NCBI RefSeq assembly: GCF_000143415.4
Contig: NW_003314287.1
Coordinates: forward strand, 642,203-706,202
Source: Selaginella moellendorffii
Lineage: Eukaryota > Plantae > Lycopodiophyta
DNA length: 64,000 bases
Direction of reading: 5' to 3'
Below are positions 1 through 13,758 of the stretch, piece after piece. Within the stretch, counting starts at the first letter, position 1. The number at the start of each line of letters is the position of its first letter. The position numbers and the translations under genes were made by a program. The notes beneath the pieces were generated by a model. The model was not told where the DNA came from. It searched no databases and was given only the letters and a program-made list of their open reading frames with translations.

Positions 1-25
1 TCTTATGTCTTCTTTTGTTTTCCAG

Positions 26-810
26 GTTGCTCCTGCGAACAAGCGATGCAATGCCGGATTTGGAGTCGATGGAGGTGAGTTTTGATCGGTTTTTCACCAT
101 TCTAAGGAAGCTCTTTTCTTTTGTTGTTGTTCTAGCTATTCACCGTGGAGGAGGACCACGTCTTCTGGATGCTTGCCAGAAGCTCCCGGACGTAGCACCG
201 CAAGGCATCAAATGCGAGGTTGGGAATGCTGTGATCACAAGGTGGGTGTAGCAAGGCCTTCTCTCGGGATTCGTTGTCTTATGTTTGTTTCGTGGTTGCC
301 AGGGGATTCAATCTTCCTGCTTCTCGTGTGATTCACGCGATTGGTCCCGTCTACGAGGACAAGAACCGAGACGAGTCGGAGAGAAACCTCACCAATGCAT
401 ACAAGTAAGGCTCTTTGATCAGAAAAAAAATGTTTTTAATCTCTCGGTGGTTATAGGAGTGCTATCGCGTTAGCTCTCAAGGAAAGCATCAGATTCATGG
501 CGTTCCCTGCGCTCTCCTGTGAACTCTACGGGTAATTCTCGTCTTTCTAAGAGTTTCGAGTCCAAAAAATCGTCTTTTTTTCCAGATATCCTTACGACGA
601 GGGAGCCGAAGTTGCATTGAACGCTGTGATAAAAAACCACCATGGATTGTCTGAGGTATATGAAGTTTGAGCTAGAACCTTTTTTCATTTTTCTTTTCTT
701 TTTGTTCTCTCCAGGTCCATTTCATTATCAAGGCACAGGATGGATACGATTCCTGGATCGACGAGGCCAAGAGGATGTTTAGACACCAGCCACAGGCACT
801 GATGCAGTAG
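26..810 (+). CDS. Macrodomain (Appr-1-p/MacroD-like) protein, 5' part outside window, 6 exons visible
   Basis: Spliced translation VAPANKRCNAGFGVDG-AIHRGGGPRLLDAC...GFNLPASRVIHAIGPVY...FPALSCELYG-YP...VHF, GT-AG introns, TAG at 808-810. Confidence 0.9.
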
Positions 811-1199
811 CAGCAAAGTTGCGAGAGCTCTATTCCTCTTAACACAGTCTGTAGCTAGAAACTACGTTAAATTTCAATCTGGAAAATGTGTGCCGATCCA
901 ACGGCTGTGGCTCGCTCTCTACTTTGTATCCATCGGATGCCATTGCCTAGTTGTTATACGGCGGAATATCCAGATGAAGCAGGATATTTGAAAGAGAGCT
1001 CGAGGACGCAAAGCGCTAGGGCAGCGCAAAGGCGCAGGCGCGCGAGGCGTTGGAGGTCAGTCATTTCTTCTGCGCTTGGATGTAGATTCGTTAGCGCGCT
1101 TTCATCCGGGCCGGAAATCTCCCAGGGTTTTGGGTTTTGGCTGGAAATCTCGCATTCTTCTCGCCCTGTTCCTTTCTAGGATTTCTTCCGGCACTCACA

Positions 1200-2494
1200 A
1201 TGGCCGCATTCTTGTGTGAAACAATCGCAGGGAAGATGGGGGCCGTGGGAGTGGTCCAAGCTTCGCAGTTCTTGGGCGCGGTGAAATCGCCGCCAGGTCT
1301 ATCATCGCTAACGCAACACACCCAGCTCGTTGGGTCGAGCATTCGCAGGAAGAACAGCATCCACACGCAGCCATCGCTTCACATCAATTGCGCCATGGGC
1401 GGGCCTCGCTCGGCGGGAATGGATCGGCCTCGCAGGAGACCAAACTTCGATCGTCCCAGTGGAGAGAAGCCCGTTCCTCCGCCGCCACCCCCGCCAGAGC
1501 CCCTCACTGGGGCGGTCAAGTATAAGCTCTCGGATACGTGCACCATGGTGATTTGGAAGGGCGACTTGGGACTGTGGTATATCGATGGACAAAACGATGC
1601 TGTGGTAAGCAAAGCTTTCGCGTCTAGGCTTTTCTTTTCTCGCTCTTTTTTCTCTCGAAGAAGTCTGAAGTTCATGTTCGTTATTTTTTCTTCTTCGTTT
1701 TCCTAGGTGGCTCCTGCGAACAAAAGATGCAATGCCGGATATGGTGTCGATGGAAGTAAGCTTTGATGCGCTTTAAAAGCCAGGAAAACATCGAGCTAAA
1801 AGTTTCTAAATGGCAGCTATCCATCGCTTTGCGGGTCCGAGGTTGCTTGATACTTGCCAGAAGTTGCCCGACGTAGCACCTCAAGGGATCAAGTGCGAGG
1901 TCGGTCAGGCTGTGATCACAAGGTAAAGCTCTCTCTTTTTGATCTTAGAGTCTTGTCCACTTCATTCTTCCTTTCTTGCAGGGGTTTTAATCTCCAGGCG
2001 TCTCGTGTGATCCACGCTGTTGGTCCTGTTTACGAGGAGAAAAATCGAGACGAGTCCGAGAAAATGCTAACCAAGGCCTATGTGTAAGTTTCTACTATGA
2101 TGATCTGGAGCTGGATTTTGGCATTCTCTAAACTTCTTCGTTCTTTTTTTTCTCAGTGCTGCTTTGAATCTGGCAACTTCTAATGGCATTAAGTACATCG
2201 CATTTCCAGCTTTGTCTTGCGAGCTCTACGGGTATGTTTCATAGAAAAACTACAAAAGCTCAAGAGCTTGCATTCACCAGGTATCCCCACGACGAGGGAG
2301 CTGAGGTTGGTCTTACGGCTTTGAGGAAGAACTGGGCTGGTTTTCAAGAGGTTTGTTTGATTTCAATCTCTCGCTTTTTTTTTGTGGAATTCATGGTTTT
2401 GGATGGGTGTTTATAGATCCACTTTGTACTCAAGAATCCAGACGCTTATGAAGCGTGGCTAGACGAAGCAAAAAGAATGTGGAGGTTTGGCTAA
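1200..2494 (+). CDS. Macrodomain protein paralogue with probable N-terminal organellar transit peptide
   Basis: ATG 1200; Ser/Ala/Arg-rich N-terminus, polyPro linker, then WKGDL...DAV-VAPANKRCNAGYGVDG...SRVIHAVGPVY...FPALSCELYGYP; same intron positions as the upstream copy; TAA 2492-2494. Confidence 0.9.
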
Positions 2495-2709
2495 AGCTTC
2501 ACACACTATAGAGAATTTAAAATTATGCTTTTTGGATATTCTTATCTCGAGTCTACGCCGCCGACTTACCAACGGCTGGATGAGATTAAGTTTGAATTTG
2601 TGCTTTTTGGATATTCTTACCTCGAGCCCTAGAATTTAGAGCGAGAAGAGAGATGGGGATAGTGCTGTCGATATGCTTCGAATGGTCAGCTCCGACGCTC
2701 GCCCCCGCC

Positions 2710-5116
2710 ATGTCACTCAAGAGCGCCTCACTCCGGCGTCTTCGATCTCTCACGCCCTGGGCGATCCAGGTGATTCCAAGCATGGATCGGCAAAAGCGCG
2801 CTTCACAGATTCTAGGTTTTGCAGGATAGCAGGGAATTTCTGGTGAGAACGAAGAAATTTGCCATCAAGGAGCACATACAATGCAAGTTTGAGGGTCTCG
2901 GATCCTCGGAACGCTGCCGATGCGAAGATTTCAAGCAGCAAAAGGGGCAGCCAGCGATTGTGGGACTCCATTCCAACTGGGTGACTGACAACATAGTAGC
3001 TACAGCTCGTCCATCGGATGCTCTCATCGGTGATTATTCCGTGCTAGAACAGGTAAGAACGTGAATCTCAGAGTAAATGCTACTACTGTTGTTGCATGGA
3101 CAGTTTGCAAAATGCGGTTTAGGTGCGATTTTCAATCTCCAAGAGCCTGGCGAGCATGGAGATTGTGGACCAGGAATCAAAGTCGAGAGTGGATTTTCAT
3201 ACACACCAGAAAGTCTCATGAGAAACAAGAGTAACTCCCGTTATACTCCAGTGTTTATTGTTTTTTTCTTCTTCTTTTCGGTGATTCGGCAGTCTTCTAT
3301 TATAACTTTCCATGGAGGGACATGACTTGCCCGAGCGTCGAGTACACTCTGAACATTGTGGCAGTGATGGATTTCCACATTTCTAAGGGAGCTAAGGTTT
3401 GTTTTGTGATCTTTGCGACCTTCGCGATCTTCAGAAGAGTTTTTCTATGCAGGTAGCTGTTCACTGTCATTCCGGACTTGGTAAGTTACTTTCATCTCAT
3501 TGTAAGCAGCTTTCTTACGGTTCGTTTGCCACAGGACGCACTGGGCTTGTGATTGCTTGCTACTTGGTGTACACGGGGCAAAGGAATGCTGTCGGAGTAC
3601 GTTCTCTTGCAGTTAGATCTTCTTTTTACGAGCTAAATGCAGCTTTTTCCTGTGGCTCAGGCTGTGGAGCTGGTCCGCATGCATAGGTTTGCCACCATTT
3701 TCCCCAGCGATTCAACATATTTCTGTGCGTATTTAATCAAAAGTCTTAGCACACTGAGCCGTGAACTTACATGCATTTTACAGACCAGGAGCTCTTCAAA
3801 CAAAACAACAAGTGCTGCACGTGAAAGAGTTTGAGGACTTTCTATCAGGATTGAAGATTGTGTACGTGCAGCCTTGGCAAACTCTGGACAATGCCGGTAC
3901 CAAAGGAACGCATCCGACGCTAGAAATTTTGATGGCAAGGCAAAGACAAATGCTTCATGGGGAAGAAAGTCGCCTTCTCCGATATACTCCAAAGGTAACA
4001 GACGTCTAGCGCTTTTGTTGAGGACTTTCTTGGTACAGGTTTTGGTGTGTTTGGTTCGGGAGCTTTCAAGCCGTATTGTTTTGAGCAAAATCAACAAAGA
4101 AGCAGTCGCTTCTGCTCTTTTGCAAGGATTGGCACTTGAGATGACAAGCGAAAAAGATCAAAACTTCATCTCAGACGTACAAACGGCGAAGGTATCAATA
4201 ACTTTTTGTGGATGTATACTATTTGCCGTCCATAATCATGCAGAAAAAGCTAAACACGGGCAATTGGGAGGTACTTTGTAGCCTCGATGTTCGAATACTT
4301 GTGCAGCTGTTTCTAGATTGGTTTTACCTTCTTAAGGTCTGAGCAACTTCTTGTTCCTAGTAGCGCTCAGACCATCGTTTCTGGCAGGATCCCATAATCC
4401 CCGATGCAGCTTTAAGCAAAGCGTTAAGTCGTGGCGAGATTCGAGCTGCAAATTACGAGCTAAAGAAAGGTGGCAAGTGTTGCTTTTACACAATCAGGCT
4501 GTTGGCTTGCTGGATGCTTCAGGTACTATTTCCCTTTACTCCGTCGCAACTGCGCAACAACTATCTATGACAGGTTGTTCCGGCAGAAAAAGACATGCGA
4601 CGCAGATTGTTTAGCGGCTTGGCACATTTATTACTTCGACCGTCGAGTCTGGCCAGCGAGGGAAAAGTAGAGCTCTTGGACAAGATTGTAGATCCATTAA
4701 ATCAGGAACATCAGAAGACGGTGGAGAGAAGCAGCACCTTTTCTCCATCGCTGCTGGAGGTAGAGTTCGGTTTGCTTTTGGAGGCGGCTGCGAAATACTG
4801 GTACAAAGTTTTGCTCCTGCAACGCAAGCTCGGCCCACTAAGCTCCATCAGTCCCAAGCTGAAAACAACCAAGAGCGACGACTTATGGGTGTACGACAAG
4901 GCTGGTATCGAGGCAGAGATTTGTAGCAATCCGGAGAGCGTCGAGGAGCTGCAAAGTGGCAACGAAGACGTCCAAGAATACATGTCAACTGTTTGTGTAG
5001 AAGATATCATCGACGAGGTCTCGTCTAGCGGACAGCTCGTCTTACCGAGCGCAACCTCCACTCCCATATCATCGAGGCCGGAATCCAGCAATGTGTCAAC
5101 TCCTCACAGAGGCTGA
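2710..5116 (+). CDS. PTPDC1: Protein tyrosine phosphatase domain-containing protein 1-like (dual-specificity phosphatase), multi-exon
   Basis: HSNWVTDNIVATARPS, IFNLQEPGEHGDCG...SGFSY, YNFPWRDM, catalytic VAVHCHSGLGRTG (CX5R), RPGALQT; start may be 2653 or 2710; 3' end uncertain. Confidence 0.82.
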
Positions 5117-6960
5117 CATGACTCCGGCAAAGCGAGGTAGCATCTCTTTTAGCGGGGGGGGGGCTTAAAGCGACTCACAGGCATCTCGGGGAGCTTGCGA
5201 CACGTATGTGAAAGTGGCAGTGGTTACTGTGAAGGCATCGATCACAAAGCAAGGTTGTCACAGGTAGAGTGGAACAGGAAAGTTGAGAAGCGATGGATCG
5301 TATATGTGAAAGTAAAGGTACTTCAAAAGCAGCCGAGTCAACAGGGGAGAAATAAAGGCGCAAACTTTTCATCGCTCTCGTGTCCAGCTCAGAGGAGAAA
5401 TCGGTTTCTTCCTTGTTCTTCGACTCCTCAACTTCGCGGAACGAGCGCGTTGATAGAATCTTTGCACACCGGGGAGTCAAAAGCGGTAACGTGTTGCTTT
5501 TTCTAGTTCTCGTTTTGTCTTTGCCTCACCTAATATAATCAGATCGATCGATCGATTGGTGGAGCAATGGCTGGGTGATCATCGATCATATACGATTATT
5601 ACACTACAGCTTCAAAGCTACCAAAGCTCTACAACTTGACTGTTCGACTGTGCATAAGGTAAGTCTACCTCTGATCCATCCTTTCCATTGTGACTTGACA
5701 TATTGTTTTCTCGTTGTTGGTAGGATTGACTCAACGCCCCCAGGATTCGACGCTTCTTCGCCTCGTCTCAGAGACACAAAATGGTTGTGTTCCTTGAACC
5801 GTGCTCGCGAGCTCGACAAAACACAATCGGATCAGAGCCATAAAAAGCCTCTCGCGTGACAATCCTCAACCATAATCCGGACGTTGACACGGCGAGATCA
5901 AACTTTATTTTGTAGCTGGGAAAGAGAAGCAAAAGTTGCTAATGAGCGCTGAGAAAAGCGCGGCTGTCTTTGTCGACGAACACCACACTGTTTAGTTTTA
6001 TCGCCGCTCCCAGATCGGCTGCTGGCACGATTGGCCCTGGCGATTAAAACAAGAAAAGAAAAATCTCTCGCACGAGAGGTGGTCCAGATAATCACATCGA
6101 TCGTACCGGCGTGAGCGGTCGAGGTGAATAGAAACACAAGTATGCGTAGCTGGTGCTAGTCTGTGGAAGATCCCTCTATCGTGAATCTAAACTTCCAGAA
6201 GGTGAAACTTCTCCCCTTCGTAAGCAAAAACAACCAAGATGAGCGAAGGCTCCACCGCCAAAGAAAGGTCGATAGCTTCAGTGGAAGTTTTTGCCCGCTT
6301 TAGCACCTAGCGCGAAGAACTTAGCACCGAACTTGGAGCTATCCCTGCCACCAAACGATGCCGAAGCGAGCAAAGTCTTGGCAGGTAAAGCTGTGGGGCT
6401 TTCAACACGGGAAGAAAGCCCTTCTTTTTGTTTGTGAGTGTGTGTCTTCTACAATGGCAGGAGAGGACCACTCTACTCTATATGTGAAGGAGCTCCAGTG
6501 GAAAGTTTTGCGTGATCTAGTGGCGCGTACATCAGCTTGAGCGATCCAAACTAATGGAAAGGGCCAACAAAATGGGAGAGTATGAAAGGTTAACAAATAC
6601 AGGGCCACATTTTTGTGCCATTTTTTCTAAACATGTAAAAAGGGAAAAATTTCTCCTGGAGAATCAAGGAGATAAAGATACCGAAAAAGAAGAGATGTAT
6701 CATGTACAACGTTATAATCTCCCACCTAATCGAGAGGATCGAAAGGAAAAAAAAGAACAAAACTAAGAATCGATCGATCGATATTTACTTTTTCCCCCCT
6801 CCCTTGCGTTTTGATCTTCTTTCTCCGCTGCCCTGTCGTTGCCTTGTCGTTGTTCCTGTGTTGATTACCTCCACCTATAAGCTGCTGTACACGAAAGAGA
6901 AACTTGGGAGAAGTCGATCAGCGAGCGAGCGACCCCACCTTGTCACTCCCAGATCCTCCA

Positions 6961-8393
6961 TCAAAACTCGCCAAAACAATCCCGCTCGCGATTATCCGAG
7001 AACTCGTACGAGATCGTCGACGAGGAGCTACGCCGGCTGTCAATCTCCTCCTCCTCCTCTTTCCTCATCGAGGACGAGCTCACCTTGGAGGAGCTCCAAC
7101 TCATGGTGGTGGCCGGGGTGGACTGGATCGTGGTTGCCGGCATCGTTTGCTTGAGCAGCTCGTCCACTGTCACCACCTCCATCCTCTCCTCATCAATCGC
7201 CAGAGGCTCCGGAACCCACGGCGGACGGGCGACGTGTTGGATCGCCTCCCAGTCCACGCCCCGGAAGAAAGCGTGTGACTTGATCTCCTCGGCGCCACCT
7301 TGGCACCCCAGCCTCTTGGTCGGGTCTTTCGCCAGGAGCTTGGAGATCAAGTCGCTCGCCTCTGTCCAGTCCCCAGGAAATGCCGGCTGCGAGCTCAGGA
7401 TGTTTAGAAACGTCTCCCTCCGGTTCCTCCCCTTGAACGGCGTCACCCCGTAGATCATCTCGTAGAGGAAGACTCCAAGTGTCCACCAGTCGAGCGGCTT
7501 GCCGTGCCCGGATCCCAGGATCATCTCCGGGGCGACGTACTCCTCGGTTCCCACAAAGGACTGCGACTTGATTTCCTTGGCGGCTGCCGCCGCTGCGGCT
7601 GCTCCTTTCCTTCCTCTCATCTCCGAGGGAAAGATTTTCTTTGTTGGGCGATGAGACGGCTTAACGTCCACCGCCTTGCGAGCAGCGCATCCGACATCCA
7701 CTGACAGGGGCGTTGAGCACATGAATGGAAGTTTCTTCATCTTGTTTTGCTTGGGCTGCGGAGCTGGAGCTGGAGCTGGAGCTCCAGGATGATGGTGGTG
7801 GTCACGGTCCTGCTCGATCCTCACGGACAGATCGAAATCCGTAAGCATTATGTGACCATCTTCCTGGATGAGAACGTTCTCGGGCTTGAGATCCCTGTAT
7901 ATGATCCCGGACTTGTGGAGATACTCGATCGCTAGGCAAACCTCCGCGGCATAGAATCTGGAAGGGAAAAGGAAAGGCAAAGTAAGAAAACCACAACTTC
8001 TCGGATGAGAGCTTTCGCTTACCGAGCGGCATTCTCCGAGAATCGTTTCTCGGGCTGGCGCTGCCGGAGCCTGTTCATGTCACCCCCGGGGCAGTAATCC
8101 ATGACGAAGTAGATGTTCTTCTTGGACTCGAAATGGCTGAAAAGCTTGGGCGTGAAAGAATGAGAGAGCATCGAGAGTATCTCCAGCTCCCTCTCCACTC
8201 GGTACTGGTTGTGCCGGGCCTTCACCACCTCCTTGTTCATCACTTTCATCGCCAAGGGCTGTCCCGTGTTTCTCAGCGTCGCCAGAAACACCGTCCCCAT
8301 GTCGCCATACCCAAGCCTCTTGAGCGCGTTGAAATCGTCGGATTCGTAGCCCGGCACGAGATCGGAGCCATGGCTATCGCTCCTCGACAGCAT
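6961..8393 (-). CDS. AGCVIII Ser/Thr kinase, AGC2 (OXI1/UNICORN-like) group; exons 8393-8023 and 7957-6961
   Basis: LGYGDMGTVF, YRDLKPEN, MLTDFDLS (DFD), subdomain VII-VIII insertion, SFVGTEEYVAPE, C-terminal FxxF (FGEF); GT-AG intron 7958-8022. Confidence 0.93.
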
Positions 8394-8690
8394 CTCGATC
8401 GAAATCTTGCCAAATTCCGTGAATTCCCCGCAGGATATCCCTGGATCGGCGATATTTCCTTCACAGACCCCCTCTCAGCTCGCCGCCTAAGCCCTGTGAC
8501 CGAATCGCGCCGTGAAGGGAAAGAAATCTACTAGATCGCTGGACGAAGAAGAATCGCAGAAACCCGCAGCTACAATACCTTGGCATTGTGACCGATCATC
8601 AAAGTCACAGCCGGGGAAGAACTAGAGATCGCGCAAAAACCTAGCGCCTTCGTCTTCTCCTTCTTCTTCCTTTCGAAAGAAAGACCGCCC

Positions 8691-8721
8691 TATAAATATA
8701 GCCGAAAAGTGCGCCACGTGT
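8691..8721 (-). promoter_or_regulatory. TATA-like box and G-box/ABRE upstream of the AGC kinase
   Basis: TATAAATATA at 8691-8700 and GCCACGTGTC at 8712-8721 (ACGTGGC on the minus strand), about 300 bp upstream of the ATG. Confidence 0.45.
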
Positions 8722-9323
8722 CCTCTGGCGGGAAAACTCCGTAAATTCGTGCGGCCTCGATGCCGAAACCGTTCGATGTGACGCATGCGCGCCGTTGGAT
8801 CCGGGATTTGCAGATATTGTTTGTGGGATTTGATCACTAGTTTTTTGCCTTTGGAGATTTAGGGCTTATAAACTTTGAATGCAAATAGATCACTCACTGT
8901 TGCTTATCAACTTTGGAGATTATTTGCGATACAATACACTAATGCGCCCAACTAGATCATTCCAACTCGAATCTCTTACACTCCAAAGTTGAGATTGGGT
9001 ATCTGGCGACCAATGTTTTCTAATCTTTGCAAATCGAGTTGACGATCGATCAATCGAAAGATATCATATAATGCGAGGGAACGAACAGATCGTGCGCGCG
9101 CGTATCATCGCTATCTTTGGGTCAAAAGCTTCCCACACGTTGTCAAATGCCCATGCCAGTTGCCAGATTTGGACCTCCTCACCAAACAAATCCCATCCCA
9201 CGTTTAGTGTTTTTTGTCAACAGGTGCGTCTTTCGTGAGAAAGAATCTCTTGGAAGAATGGTTGTTACCGTATTTAATACGCCAAGAGAAGAGAAGCAAA
9301 AACAAATACATACCTTTGATTCC

Positions 9324-11075
9324 TAAGCCGGTGACAAGAGGATTCGCCACACGGAGGAGGCGATCTCGACTTGAAGCTCAGCTGGTCTCGAATGCGGCTG
9401 GAGCGTCAAACTGGAGTGAGCGTGGCGAGCTCTTTGTTTGATCCCTGGCAAAGAAACCACCAGTCCAATCCATCAGCAGTTCCATCAAACAAGAGGACGC
9501 TCGAAAGGCTCGTAAGAGATGAGGAGCATACCTCTTTGACGACCAAAGCCGTGAAGCTACCGTACGCGGAGGAGCTTTTCTCCTCGGGCTCCATGCTGCT
9601 CGCCATCGATCAGCGTCACTGTGCTTTTGCTGCTCTAGTCGTGGGAGAAATCGCTGCTGTTGGACGCGGACTTCGCACCGGCAGTGGCTGTGTTCTAGAA
9701 ATCCTCACGCTGCCGATGCGCGATCGCTGGCGATGGCGAGTGACACGGAAGAAGCCGTGAGAAGCCACGAGGACGATGGCCACTGCCAAGGAGACCTGGG
9801 AGGCTGGCGTCGTCGACCGCGGTAGAAGGTCGCTACTGACCAGCAAGCGAGGAGAATACGTCTGTAAGTCGTCGACGTTCTCAAGCTCCGGAAGCTCGTC
9901 ACCAACACTGGACAGGCCCTCGCCGCTGTGAACTTCACGTACAGTAGTAGCGTCGTCGTCACTTGAGGATTCCTGACTCTTCTTCTGCGGCCTTTGTGAA
10001 CTCCAAAGACTCGCCAGCCAAGATGCTTCCCACATCATGATAAAACTCCACGTCTTCGTGTTCCATCAGCTCCAAGTATCTCTGCTGGACGTCTCGCTCG
10101 GACCGTCATGAGCAGCGCATCCAGCTCCAAGGAATCTACCGAAAACAAACTGAGACCTGTGCTCTGATTGCGAAAGCTCTCGCTTACATCGTAGTCAAGA
10201 GACCATTCCCAGTCGTCGAAGTCAGCAAAGTCTCTTGTCACCAAGATGCTTAGTCCGAGTGAACTTCTGCCTTAAGGTGGAGACACTGCTTTCGCTCGCG
10301 ATGTCTGTATCCGTTATATCGATTGCTACATGAACTTCAGCATGAATGATGCTGCTCTCAAAGTCGTGCCGAATGGCGCTTCCTCCTGTTCAGTCACTAC
10401 CACTTCACCATTTTCCTTCCCTTCTATCGTCTGGTTGATCGATCAGCACCTAGCTTTTCCTGGAAATGGTCGTCCAAACTTTCCTGTGGTTCTTCAGTGG
10501 CTCGTACATCCTTCGGTAAGAACCTCGGTAGCAACATCTTCGACGTGAAACAAACGCTCTTCGTTGCTGAGACACTCTTCTTCGGCAAAACACTTCCATC
10601 ACCCGTTGCGTTTTCTCCTCGAGACTTGAGAGACTCGATGGGACATTCCAGAGTCTCACCTTCTTTAAGCTCGAGACTGCTGAGAAACTCCAGACGCCAG
10701 TCAAAACTTCGGCCTGGGAGTCCGCCAGTTCACCTTCGGATCATACCTGTTCATTCGAGCTCTCCAATCCATGGCTCTCGGCGGAGAAAGTGTAAACCGC
10801 AAAGTTGGGCTTGGCGGAGACATCGACAGCGACGACAAGCTCTCGTCGCTGCTGCTATCAGCACTGTAGAGAGCGATAATGCTCTTGGTGGTTCCTGGTC
10901 TACAGCACGCCAGTCCTGTTCCTGGTTTTCCCGAAGGATCGTCTTAGAGCTGCTGGTCGTAGTCAAGGAATTCCAGACCTTGAATTTTCCTCCACTATCC
11001 ACAGCCACATTCTCTTTGAACGATAAGTCAAGCCCGCCGATGATAGCTGTGAAGGCAAAGTCAGGGCTAGAGCAG
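9324..11075 (-). pseudogene. Degraded tandem copy of the downstream membrane protein gene
   Basis: Colinear with ~11868-13680 (SSPDFAFTAII, VTRDFADFDDWEWS, YGSFTA, GSNKEL) but broken by many deletions and frameshifts. Confidence 0.85.
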
Positions 11076-11169
11076 AAAGAATGGATTGCTTTTGCCTCTC
11101 TTCTCGTGCCTTCTTCTTTTGCCTCTCTCTTGTTGTGCTTAATGGTGGAGCCTGCCATCTTTTGCCTCT

Positions 11170-11188
11170 AAACCCTAAACCCTAAACC
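11170..11188 (+). promoter_or_regulatory. Tandem telo-box
   Basis: AAACCCTAAACCCTAAACC. Confidence 0.55.
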
Positions 11189-11867
11189 AGCTCCAATGAG
11201 AAACAAAGCTTTTGTTTTCTCTCCCAGAAGGATTTTCATTACGCAGCCATGAAGTTGGCCGGTTCTCCAAGAAAGAAAAAACAGGACGATTACAAGCAGC
11301 CCCGGACGCATGTCCGAGGAAGACAAGGAGCAAACCGTGTCAAACATCGCAAACCACATCTGCGGACGAGTTCATCCAAGAGCGTCAAATGGGCCTCTTC
11401 CGGAAATGCGATGGGGATCGAGAAAAAGAAGTCGCCGAAACCGTATACCATGATCGCCTAAAGGAAAGCAAGTTTGCATGGGGGGAACTCAGTTTTAATC
11501 CACGTGGCGCAGCAGCACAAGAAACTCGAATTTCTTACACTGATTGGGTATCGGGCAACCATGGTTTTCTAATCGAATTGACGAACAATGACTCTAAAGA
11601 TACCATATAATGCAAGGGATCGTATCATCGTCCCCCGAGAATATGGGGATCGAATATGCAACATCAATATCTTTGGGTCAAAAGCCTCACACACGTTGTC
11701 AAATGCCTTTGCAAGTTGTTGGATTTGGACTTCCTCACCAAACAAATCCCACGCTTTGTTTTTTTTGTCAACAGGTGCGCGATAGATTCTTAAGACTGGA
11801 TGGAAACGGTATTTATACACAAGAGAAGAGAAGTAAACTGATACATACCTTTGATCTCTTGTTTGAG

Positions 11868-13758
11868 CTAAGCCGGTGACAAGAGGATTCGCCTCACAAG
11901 ACAAGGAGACCTCGACTTTAAGCTCCGCTGGTCTCGAATGCGGCTGGAGCGTCGAACTGGAGTGAGCGTAACGAGCTCCTTGTTTGATCCCTGGATAAAG
12001 AAAAGTCCATCTTGAGCTCGAAAAGAAAAGGGAGCATACCTCGTTGACGACGATGCGCTTGTAAGCCGTGAAGCTACCGTACGCGGAGGAGCCTTTCTCC
12101 GAGGGGAGGATATCATCGATCAACGCCTTCGTGGGAGGAGTCGCTGCTGTTGGACGCGGACTTCGCGCCAGCAGTGGCTGTGTTCTAGAAATGCTGCCGG
12201 TGCGCGATCGATGGCAATATACACGGAAGAAGACGTGAGCAACCACGAGGACGATCGCCACTACCAAGGAGAGCTGGGAAGCTGGCGTCGTCGACCGCGG
12301 TAGGAGCTCGCCTTTGGCCAGCAAGCGAGGAAAATACATCTGTAAGTCGTCGACGTTCTCGAGCTCCGGAAGCTCGTCACCAACACTGGACAAGCTCTCG
12401 CCGCTGTGAACTTCTGTATGATCACGTACATCAACGTCGTCGTCACTTGATTGCTCTCCTTGAACTCCTGACGGTTCTTTTTCTGCTTCTTCTTCGGCCT
12501 TTGTGAACTCCAAAGACCCGCCGGCCAAGATGCTTCCCACGTCATGATAAAACTCGACGTCTTCGTGTTCCATCAGCTCCAAGTATCTCTGCTGGACGTC
12601 TCGCTCGGACCCGTACATGATCGCCATGAGCAGCGCATCCAGCTCCAAGGAATCCGTCGAGAATAGACTGAGACCTGTGCTCTGATTGCGAAAGCTCTCG
12701 CTCACATCGTAGTCAGGAGACCATTCCCAGTCGTCGAAGTCAGCGAAGTCTCTTGTCACCGTGTCTTCAAGATGCTTAGTCCAAGTGAACTTCTGCCTCA
12801 AGGTGGAGACACTGCTTTCGCTCGCGATGTCTGTATCCGCTATCATCAACGTTATACCGATTGCTACAAAACTTCCCAGCAGCAGCATGAATGACGCTGC
12901 TCTCAAAGTCGTGCAGAATAATGGCGCTTCCTCCTGTTTAGTCGCTGCCATTTCACCATCTTCCTTCCCTTCTATGGCCCTCGGTGACTGATCATCGCCT
13001 AGCTTTCCATCCTGGAAATGGTCGCTCAAACTTTGCTGCTGTTCTGTAGAGCTCAGAACCTCGGTAGCAACATCGTCGACGTGAAACGAACGCTTTTCGT
13101 TGCTGAGACAATCCTCTTCTTCGTTGTCCGCGGACAAAACACTTGCATCACCCGCTGCGTTTTGTTCTCGAGAATTGAGAGACTCGATGGCACTCTCCAG
13201 AGTCTCACCTTCTTTAAGCTCGAGACTGCTGAGAAACTCGAGACGCCAGTCCGGGCGGTACCTCAAAAACTTCGGTCGGGGAGTCCGCAAGTTCACCTTC
13301 GGATCATACCTATGGCCACCTTCCACAGAACCACTCGAGCTCTCCGATCCATTCGGCGACATGGGTGGAGAGAGAGTAAACCGCGAAGTTGGGCTTGGAG
13401 GAGACGTCGACAGCGACGACAAGCTCTCGTCGCTGCTATCAGCACTGTTTCTCTCGGAGGAGAACGATAATGCTCTGATAGCCTTTGGTGGCTCCTCCTC
13501 CACAGCACACCAGTCCTGTTCCTGGTAGCAATTACTTTCCCCAAGGATCCTCTTGGAGCTGGTCTTAGTCGTGGAATTCCAGACCTTGAATTTTCCTCCA
13601 CTATCCACAGTCGCATTCTCTTTGAACGATAAGTCAAGGTCGCCGATGATAGCTGTGAAGGCAAAGTCAGGGCTAGAGCCAAGAATTTCCCGAGCTAGAA
13701 AGAATGGACTCACCGGGCGGATTATCGGCCGGGGAGCTCTTAAAGAGCGGATTTTCAT
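11868..13758 (-). CDS. Plant membrane protein of unknown function (resembles the Arabidopsis At1g16630/At2g16270 family); exons 13758-12040 and 11990-11868, ~613 aa
   Basis: YDPKVNLRTPRPKFLRYRP motif, two hydrophobic segments, YGSFTAYKRI, and after a 49-nt GT-AG intron TPVRRSSRIR; family assignment is from recalled motifs. Confidence 0.75.

What the first reader, a model, noticed from the sequence alone, without database searches (positions are those of the whole stretch)
26..2494. Two macrodomains naturally carrying the Gly-to-Glu change used to abolish ADP-ribose binding
Seen: both paralogues have FPALSCELYGYP (~500-531, ~2200-2231) instead of FPAIS(T/C)GxYGYP, APAN instead of NxAN, and AGFG/AGYG instead of GGGG. 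Knowledge: Gly>Glu at this loop-2 position (MacroD1 G270E, MacroD2 G188E) is the standard binding-deficient mutant, and the Asn and Gly loop act in catalysis. The Glu codons differ (GAA and GAG) and both frames are intact. Inference: a maintained pseudo-enzyme or a macrodomain with a different ligand.
Basis: partly seen in the sequence, partly recalled or inferred. Interest (0 to 1): 0.72.

Follow-up and report, generated by a model that had tools for sequence, protein, structure and literature searches.

The report
Spikemoss macrodomain pair with altered pocket
Two neighbouring, expressed and conserved spikemoss (Selaginella moellendorffii) genes encode ADP-ribose-type "macro" domains that naturally carry the glutamate used in the laboratory to destroy ADP-ribose binding. 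They belong to a gene expansion found here only in this species, next to a normal copy, and their function is untested, so this is a modest curiosity.

Summary
Window 26-810 and 1200-2494 hold two tandem, intron-containing genes of Selaginella moellendorffii that encode MacroD-type macrodomains. Gene 1 is LOC9655751. Both read APAN / AG(F/Y)GVDG / SCELYG. The Glu (GAA 521-523, GAG 2221-2223) aligns with MacroD2 G188 and MacroD1 G270.

One correction: the Asn that is lost is the first of NAAN. The catalytic Asn (MacroD2 N92), the Asp (D102) and the His are kept.

Both genes are spliced and transcribed. They are under purifying selection: omega is 0.14, and the two haplotypes differ by 7 synonymous and 0 non-synonymous changes.

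Of 341 relatives outside this species, 339 keep the Gly and none has an aromatic residue in the Gly loop. The pair belongs to a clade of at least six S. moellendorffii paralogues with Glu, Arg, Asn or Gly at this site. A canonical copy lies about 10 kb upstream.

The most likely reading is a maintained macrodomain that no longer binds ADP-ribose in the standard way. This is inferred, not tested.

The scan already reported this pair on other DNA of the same genome, the other haplotype (s1-405282). My results agree with that report.

The parts
26..810 (+). Gene 1 (LOC9655751), exons 2-7: 26-74, 136-241, 303-404, 457-531, 586-655, 715-810 (stop 808-810). Exon 1 (122 codons) lies before the window.
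   Evidence: The spliced model equals the C-terminal 165 aa of P0001. All introns except 656-714 appear as joints in spliced contigs of 4 studies.
1200..2494 (+). Gene 2, exons 1-7: 1200 (or ATG 1236)-1604, 1707-1755, 1817-1922, 1982-2083, 2157-2231, 2281-2350, 2417-2494. The product is 294 aa, or 282 aa from ATG 1236.
   Evidence: The exons hit Pfam Macro in collinear order. A 282-aa Macro gene is called at the matching place of L003.
521..523 (+). Gene 1 Glu codon GAA at the loop-2 Gly position (MacroD2 G188 / MacroD1 G270)
2221..2223 (+). Gene 2 Glu codon GAG at the same position
29..73 (+). Gene 1 loop 1: APAN (29-40; the first Asn is replaced, the catalytic Asn at 38-40 is kept), AGFG (53-64), VDG (65-73; the Asp is kept)
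1710..1754 (+). Gene 2 loop 1: APAN (1710-1721), AGYG (1734-1745), VDG (1746-1754)
1054..1228 (+). Optional GT..AG intron that joins the region after gene 1 to gene 2 just before ATG 1236. It is either a 5'UTR intron or read-through splicing, and it removes ATG 1200.
   Evidence: The joint 1053^1229 is present in contigs of two studies and absent in two others, where contigs run unspliced from 1027 or begin later.

Best explanation
Shown: these are two tandem nuclear genes of Selaginella moellendorffii encoding MacroD-type macrodomains. They belong to a clade of at least six paralogues, found here only in S. moellendorffii, that split from the land-plant MacroD family to which the Arabidopsis Appr-1-p-processing protein belongs. 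A canonical copy survives about 10 kb away.

Inferred: each domain sits behind a presequence-like N-terminus, probably for plastid or mitochondrial import, and a poly-proline tract.

Inferred order of events: loop 1 was remodelled first, to APANK(R/K)xN(A/T)G. The loop-2 glycine, whose backbone holds the ADP-ribose pyrophosphate, was then replaced independently, by Glu in the ancestor of genes 1 and 2 and by Arg in the sister branch.

Inferred mechanism: the Glu side chain and the Phe/Tyr in the glycine loop fill and repel the pyrophosphate and catalytic-water site. The proteins therefore no longer bind or hydrolyse ADP-ribose in the canonical way. They are kept for a non-canonical role as a pseudo-enzyme or scaffold, while the canonical paralogue retains the ancestral activity.
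For: Identity and gene models.

Fold: the AlphaFold2 model has pLDDT 96.5, and Foldseek gives TM 0.86-0.92 to the OiMacroD-ADPr structures and 0.77 to MacroD2.

Position of the Glu: it aligns with G188/G270. G188E belongs to the mutant class with dramatic loss of ADPr affinity, and the G188 backbone H-bonds the pyrophosphate. G270E is used as the inactive MacroD1 form.

Phe/Tyr position: it aligns with OiMacroD G37, where Val removes the substrate-coordinated water and cuts kcat fourfold.

Rarity: Gly in 339 of 341 relatives outside this species, and no aromatic at the G99 position.

Maintenance: omega is 0.14 over 189 macro-domain codons with dS about 1.6. The two haplotypes differ by 7 synonymous and 0 non-synonymous exon changes, against about 10% differing columns outside exons.

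Clade: five S. moellendorffii paralogues group with SH-aLRT 99. Holding all six together gives a better likelihood than the free tree (p-AU 0.91).

Codons: GAA/GAG against CGC. Each is one step from a Gly codon but three steps from the other.

Canonical copy: P0356/P0211 has NAAN, GGGG and SCGIYG and lies about 10 kb upstream.

Plastid hint: the tomato orthologue of At2g40600 was found in the chloroplast stroma proteome.
Against: No binding or activity data exist for any of these proteins.

The residues usually mutated to test catalysis are all retained in genes 1 and 2: the N92, D102 and H106 equivalents, G98/G100 and the Tyr of loop 2. New clade-specific motifs (APANKR, LPDVAPQGIK, EGAEV) are conserved. 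Both points fit a still-used pocket at least as well as a dead one.

The effect of G-to-E was measured in human MacroD1/2, not in this loop context.

I could not inspect side-chain positions in the model because no coordinates are available.

Targeting is inferred from N-terminal composition and one orthologue's proteomics only.
Confidence: 0.5

Rival explanations
1. Changed ligand or changed chemistry. The remodelled pocket (Glu, an aromatic residue, a new Lys, with Asn/Asp/His retained) is a working site for a different small molecule or modified macromolecule. The Glu may serve as a ligand-binding or catalytic residue. The Glu and Arg paralogues may prefer ligands of opposite charge.
For: Strong purifying selection on the domain. 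Clade-specific motifs around the pocket are conserved among paralogues whose synonymous sites are saturated. The catalytic Asn, Asp and His are kept in genes 1 and 2.
Against: No candidate ligand emerges from any analysis. The sister paralogues P0202 and P0210 have also lost the Asp and His, which looks like progressive erosion rather than a redesigned site. Glu, Arg and Asn at one position across the paralogues suggests relaxed constraint there.
Confidence: 0.25
2. Still an ordinary ADP-ribosylhydrolase or ADP-ribose binder. The loop adopts a conformation that turns the Glu outward, and the tandem pair are simply diverged isoenzymes.
For: The fold and most contact residues are conserved, and the model is confident. 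OiMacroD G37V still binds ADPr with unchanged Km.
Against: G188E and G270E abolish binding or activity in two human enzymes. The Gly is kept in 339 of 341 relatives, which indicates that a side chain is not tolerated there when the canonical function is kept. Three pocket changes coincide.
Confidence: 0.2
3. Decaying duplicates or an annotation artefact, with no maintained function.
Against: Frames are intact, splicing is canonical and confirmed by transcripts in 4 studies. Omega is 0.14. The haplotypes differ by 0 non-synonymous against 7 synonymous changes.
Confidence: 0.03

Closest known systems
Human MacroD2 / MacroD1 (PDB 4IQY, 2X47) and bacterial OiMacroD / YmdB: MacroD-type mono-ADP-ribosylhydrolases
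   Same: Same fold (TM 0.77-0.92) and 31-36% identity. Collinear motifs, with the catalytic Asn, the Asp, the His and the YGYP of loop 2 retained.
   Different: The first Asn of NAAN is Ala. GGGG is A-G-(F/Y)-G. The loop-2 Gly (G188/G270) is Glu. The proteins carry a presequence-like N-terminus and a poly-Pro tract. NCBIfam O-acetyl-ADP-ribose deacetylase scores 138 bits against a cutoff of 200.
Land-plant organellar MacroD homologues (Arabidopsis 'Appr-1-p processing enzyme family protein' P0089, which I take to be At2g40600 from memory and the name match; Marchantia, Diphasiastrum, Ginkgo, Adiantum)
   Same: Closest sequence relatives (44-49% identity), similar length, N-terminal extension, and the SC(G)xYGYP and 'W.VDG..D' plant signatures.
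   Different: Nearly all of them keep N(P/A)AN and GGGG(A/V)DG, and all keep SCG(V/I)(Y/F)G. The Glu/Arg/Asn replacements and the APANK signature were found only in S. moellendorffii.
Naturally ADP-ribose-blind macrodomains, for example the coronavirus SUD-M domain, which the OiMacroD paper says fails to bind ADPr and binds G-quadruplexes. macroH2A1.2 and macroH2A2 are further examples from my own knowledge.
   Same: A macro fold kept under selection although the canonical ligand pocket is altered.
   Different: Different macrodomain classes and different substitutions. None is known to me to carry Glu at this loop-2 Gly. The comparison is by analogy only and was not tested here.
S. moellendorffii paralogues LOC9644583 (Arg), LOC9649174 / LOC9637899 (Arg), SELMODRAFT_444786 (Asn), LOC9642578 (Gly)
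   Same: One clade with genes 1 and 2. They share the APxNK(R/K)xN(A/T)G loop, and most share the poly-Pro tract before the domain. LOC9644583 has the same 7-exon structure.
   Different: A different residue at the Gly site. LOC9649174 and SELMODRAFT_444786 have also lost the Asp and the His. SELMODRAFT_444786 carries a long Q/G/Y/S/P-rich tail.

Membership tests
Macro domain superfamily (Pfam PF01661) | Significant match to the Pfam Macro profile | tested here: met
   P0001 (gene 1) scores 115 bits against a cutoff of 22. Gene 2 exons 3, 4 and 5 hit profile positions 18-48, 50-82 and 85-107 in order.
Macro domain superfamily (Pfam PF01661) | Three-layer alpha/beta/alpha macro fold | tested here: met
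   The AlphaFold2 model has pLDDT 96.5 and pTM 0.92. The top Foldseek hits are all macrodomains, with E down to 1e-17.
MacroD-type hydrolases | N-x-A-N motif with the catalytic second Asn (MacroD2 N92, OiMacroD N30) | tested here: met
   The second Asn is present in both genes. Only the first Asn (N89) is Ala.
MacroD-type hydrolases | GGGG(V/A)DG loop 1 with small residues around the catalytic water, plus the Asp | tested here: not met
   The loop reads A-G-(F/Y)-G-V-D-G. The Asp is kept, but an aromatic residue sits at the OiMacroD G37 position. None of 341 relatives has Phe or Tyr there.
MacroD-type hydrolases | Loop-2 Gly (MacroD2 G188 / MacroD1 G270) whose backbone binds the pyrophosphate | tested here: not met
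   Glu in both genes. Gly in 339 of 341 relatives.
MacroD-type hydrolases | Binds ADP-ribose and hydrolyses mono-ADP-ribosyl or O-acetyl-ADP-ribose substrates | not testable with these tools
   This needs recombinant protein assays.
Land-plant organellar MacroD orthogroup (At2g40600-like) | Groups with the plant sequences rather than with bacterial macrodomains | tested here: met
   The nearest hits are plant proteins. In the tree the S. moellendorffii clade sits inside the plant group, though most deep forks have weak support.
Land-plant organellar MacroD orthogroup (At2g40600-like) | Plastid or organelle localisation | not tested
   Only indirect evidence: a presequence-like N-terminus and the tomato orthologue in the stroma proteome. 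No targeting predictor is available here.

The most novel reading that the evidence does not exclude
The Glu, the aromatic residue and the new Lys, together with the retained Asn/Asp/His, form a new working site. It recognises, or acts on, a ligand other than ADP-ribose inside an organelle. The Glu-type and Arg-type paralogues would have opposite charge preferences. This would be a natural example of a macrodomain pocket re-specified by the very substitution used to kill it in the laboratory.
Probability: 0.2. Interest if true: 0.7.

Novelty: new variant of a known kind. Interest (0 to 1): 0.4.

Why it matters
Macrodomain work uses G-to-E at this loop as the standard dead control. A natural protein that fixed this change yet stayed under strong purifying selection for a long time (synonymous sites are saturated) offers a ready-made system. 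A canonical sister gene lies 10 kb away, and other paralogues carry Arg, Asn or Gly at the same site. Together they allow one to ask what a macro fold does once it gives up canonical ADP-ribose binding. They also show how pseudo-enzymes or new specificities arise after duplication.

Plant MacroD homologues are functionally uncharacterised; a 2019 review says the plant enzymes had not been determined. Any assay result here would therefore also inform plant and organellar ADP-ribose biology.

As it stands this is a lineage-restricted curiosity without functional data.

Tried and rejected
- Prokaryotic ORF reading: rejected. The region is eukaryotic with short GT..AG introns.
- My first exon coordinates were off by 1-2 bases and gave frameshifts. 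I corrected them from the splice motifs.
- Rfam scan of the whole window: nothing.
- The word search with the gene 2 exon 1 ORF returned only gene 1's protein.
- P0002 and P0004 looked like extra paralogues. They are an old chimeric model (gene 1 exons joined to gene 2 exons) and an intron-retaining model. P0002 is not on record as a called gene.
- Literature searches for Selaginella macrodomains and plant MacroD function found nothing relevant.
- The AU test adding the canonical copy to the clade did not finish in time.
- I could not inspect side-chain geometry because model coordinates are not exposed.
- I could not ask whether other Selaginella species carry SCELYG.
- No protein-complex job was sent, because I make no claim that these proteins bind a partner.
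- The joined (spliced) product of gene 2 has no reference. It was handled only inside local scripts and was not sent to any search or fold tool. Gene 2 was searched exon by exon. Gene 1 was searched through the database protein P0001.

Full report
WHAT IS THERE

The left end of the window is eukaryotic DNA with short GT..AG introns. It holds two tandem genes on the + strand.

- Gene 1 is cut by the window edge. Its exons 2-7 are 26-74, 136-241, 303-404, 457-531, 586-655 and 715-810.
- Gene 2 has seven exons: 1200-1604, 1707-1755, 1817-1922, 1982-2083, 2157-2231, 2281-2350 and 2417-2494.
- The exon phases and intron positions are the same in the two genes.

A word search with the open frame of gene 2's first exon returned one protein, P0001, which is 'uncharacterized protein LOC9655751 [Selaginella moellendorffii]'. 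Its last 165 residues are identical to my gene 1 model. The window is therefore S. moellendorffii.

The window is 97.5% identical to scaffold GL377599.1 (L003), where both genes are also present. It is evidently the other haplotype or another assembly of the same locus.

Handling of sequences: the joined product of gene 2 has no reference. I built it only inside local scripts for translation, alignment, dN/dS and the tree. I did not send it to any search or fold tool. Gene 2 was searched exon by exon, and its exons hit Pfam Macro in collinear order. Gene 1 was studied through P0001.

CHECK OF THE OBSERVATION

- FPALSCELYG is at 503-531 and 2203-2231. The YP follows in the next exon.
- The Glu codons are GAA (521-523) and GAG (2221-2223).
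- APAN is at 29-40 and 1710-1721.
- AGFG is at 53-64 and AGYG at 1734-1745.

A phmmer alignment to solved structures puts the Glu opposite index 185 of 4iqy_A. The chain has 240 residues, which I read as three tag residues plus MacroD2 7-243, so index 185 is G188. The Glu also falls opposite index 180 of 2x47_A, which has 235 residues (MacroD1 91-325), so index 180 is G270. The flanks FPxxS(T/C)-x-(I/L)YG(F/Y)P are conserved and ungapped, so the equivalence is secure. Only the numbering offsets are my inference.

The same alignment corrects one point. In MacroD2 numbering, NAAN is N89-A-A-N92 and GGGGVDG is G97-G100, V101, D102. The Selaginella proteins have lost N89 (now Ala), G97 (Ala) and G99 (Phe/Tyr). 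They keep N92, G98, G100, D102 and the following His. N92 corresponds to OiMacroD N30, the Asn tested as a catalytic mutant. The Phe/Tyr aligns with Val37 of the OiMacroD G37V structure 5LAU.

IS IT MORE THAN CHANCE?

The G188 position is Gly in 339. The G99 position is never aromatic. The N89 position is Asn in 325 of 338.

About 120 angiosperm orthologues read NPAN / GGGGADG / SCG(V/I)YG with few exceptions. Brassicaceae have TPAN.

Several named relatives are all canonical:
- the liverworts Riccia, Calypogeia and Marchantia;
- the lycophyte Diphasiastrum;
- the fern Adiantum;
- Ginkgo and Taxus;
- the streptophyte alga Spirogloea.

THE FAMILY AROUND THE PAIR

The exhaustive representative search (12,652 hits; the best 150 inspected) contains a handful of proteins that lack the loop-2 Gly. 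All the close ones are from S. moellendorffii:

- LOC9644583 (P0003): SCRIYG, with loop 1 reading AGAAVDG.
- LOC9649174 / LOC9637899 (P0202 / P0348): SCRIYG, with loop 1 reading TGPAVNA followed by LF, so the Asp and His are also lost.
- SELMODRAFT_444786 (P0210): SCNIYG, with the same degenerate loop and a long Q/G/Y/S/P-rich tail.
- LOC9642578 (P0235): keeps the Gly (SCGVYG) but has APANKKLNAGIGVNR.

All of them share APxNK(R/K)xN(A/T)G.

A maximum-likelihood tree, built with the motif columns removed, groups genes 1 and 2 with the Arg and Asn paralogues (SH-aLRT 99, stem length 0.48). Genes 1 and 2 are sisters (87). Forcing all six into one clade gives a better likelihood than the quick free search (p-AU 0.91). 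LOC9642578 is a long branch, so its position is less certain.

The Arg codon in LOC9644583 is CGC on both haplotype scaffolds. GAA/GAG and CGC are each one step from a Gly codon but three steps from each other. I infer that the Gly was lost at least twice, after loop 1 had already changed.

S. moellendorffii also keeps a canonical member, LOC9655748 / LOC9637734 (P0356 / P0211). It has NAAN, GGGGVDG and SCGIYGYP. On GL377599.1 it lies at about 759.5-761.2 kb on the minus strand, roughly 10 kb upstream of gene 1, which starts at 771,255.

ARE THE GENES ALIVE?

- Spliced contigs from runs of four different studies carry joints at every intron except 656-714 of gene 1, which the tool skipped as repeat. 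The runs hold about half of the sampled words of the stretch, which matches the exon fraction. Both genes are therefore transcribed and spliced as modelled.
- Between genes 1 and 2, over 189 macro-domain codons, dN is 0.23, dS is about 1.65 (saturated) and omega is 0.14. The N-terminal part gives omega 0.30.
- Between the two haplotypes there are 7 differences in 1383 exon bases. All are synonymous, in both genes. Outside the exons about 10% of alignment columns differ, counting indels. If roughly a quarter of random coding changes are synonymous, seven out of seven has a chance of about 6e-5. This is my rough estimate.
- Pseudogene decay is therefore excluded.

STRUCTURE

An AlphaFold2 model of P0001 residues 88-287, built from an 87-row alignment, is very confident (pLDDT 96.5, pTM 0.92). 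Its best structural matches are:
- OiMacroD with ADP-ribose (TMq 0.86, TMt 0.90-0.92);
- human MacroD2 (TMq 0.77);
- E. coli YmdB;
- MacroD1.

Coordinates are not exposed, so I could not see where the Glu and Phe side chains point. AlphaFold is in any case insensitive to such substitutions.

HOW IT PROBABLY WORKS

Established facts from papers:
- The G188 backbone makes bifurcated H-bonds to the ADP-ribose pyrophosphate. G188E and G100E belong to the mutant class with dramatic loss of affinity (bioRxiv 10.1101/2021.05.08.443251).
- MacroD1 G270E is used as the inactive form (PMC5787345).
- In OiMacroD, G37V expels the substrate-coordinated water W6 and lowers kcat fourfold without changing Km (PMC5413906).

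By analogy, a Glu at the first site and a Phe or Tyr at the second should block the pyrophosphate site and the catalytic water. The canonical paralogue nearby can carry the ancestral activity. This is the usual setting for a duplicate to lose or change function.

I therefore think it most likely (about 0.5) that genes 1 and 2 encode macrodomains that no longer handle ADP-ribose canonically and are kept for another role.

Against a simple 'dead pocket':
- Asn, Asp, His and the loop-2 Tyr are retained in genes 1 and 2.
- New motifs shared by the divergent clade are conserved (APANKR, LPDVAPQGIK, EGAEV).

This keeps a changed-ligand reading alive (about 0.25). Ordinary activity with a re-arranged loop remains possible (about 0.2).

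Localisation is inferred only. The N-termini look like organellar presequences. [quoted passage not shown] That P0089 is At2g40600 is from my memory and the matching name, not from a tool.

COMPARISON AND NOVELTY

By homology and fold these are members of the macro superfamily and of the plant MacroD orthogroup. They fail two sequence features that define working MacroD hydrolases: the small-residue glycine loop and the loop-2 Gly.

NCBIfam's O-acetyl-ADP-ribose deacetylase model scores 138 bits against a cutoff of 200. The canonical paralogue scores 189.

I found no paper on Selaginella macrodomains. A 2019 review states that the plant enzymes had not been determined. Natural ADP-ribose-blind macrodomains are known in other classes, so this is a new variant of a known kind.

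The same pair was already reported and followed up by this scan on the other haplotype (s1-405282). I reached the same conclusions independently. I add the correction about the Asn, the OiMacroD G37 equivalence, the position of the canonical copy, the haplotype test and the inferred order of events.

VERDICT

Interest is modest until a binding assay is done.

Noticed in passing
window 1054-1228: A GT..AG joint 1053^1229 in contigs of two studies links the region after gene 1's stop to gene 2 just upstream of ATG 1236. Other contigs run unspliced from 1027. This suggests either read-through transcription or a 5'UTR intron of gene 2 that overlaps gene 1's 3'UTR. It also explains why the public gene range of LOC9655751 spans both genes (L003 10001-12898).
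   Followed up: partly
outside the window: L004 3001-4670 (GL377599.1, about 759.5-761.2 kb, minus strand): A canonical macrodomain paralogue, LOC9655748 (449 aa; NAAN, GGGG, SCGIYGYP), lies about 10 kb upstream of gene 1. Its long N-terminal region contains repeated (F/L)QFG(S/T) motifs. This is the protein another reader likened to alphavirus nsP3.
   Followed up: partly
window about 2660-3830, + strand (L003 13065-14236): Directly downstream of gene 2 on the same strand is a gene for a 262-aa dual-specificity phosphatase-like protein (Pfam DSPc / PTP-SAK / Tc-R-P, per the precomputed table). One 4770-nt contig runs from gene 1 through gene 2 and on past position 2600.
   Followed up: no
P0202, P0348, P0210 (other S. 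moellendorffii scaffolds): Two further paralogues have lost the loop-1 Asp and the His as well (TGPAVNAVLF). One has a 400-residue Q/G/Y/S/P-rich low-complexity tail. Most members of the clade have a poly-proline tract just before the macro domain.
   Followed up: partly
P0005-P0008, P0089 and other Brassicaceae orthologues: Brassicaceae orthologues read TPAN, where other angiosperms read NPAN. This is a separate, lineage-specific loss of the first Asn with the rest of the pocket intact.
   Followed up: no
P0002 and P0004 (public protein models): SELMODRAFT_107247 is a chimera of gene 1 exons 1-4 and gene 2 exons 5-7. SELMODRAFT_98248 retains an intron. Both old models could mislead family counts.
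   Followed up: yes
window 1-12539 against L003: The window is only 97-97.5% identical to GL377599.1 over 12.5 kb, with many indels in non-coding DNA. It represents the second haplotype or a different assembly of S. moellendorffii.
   Followed up: partly
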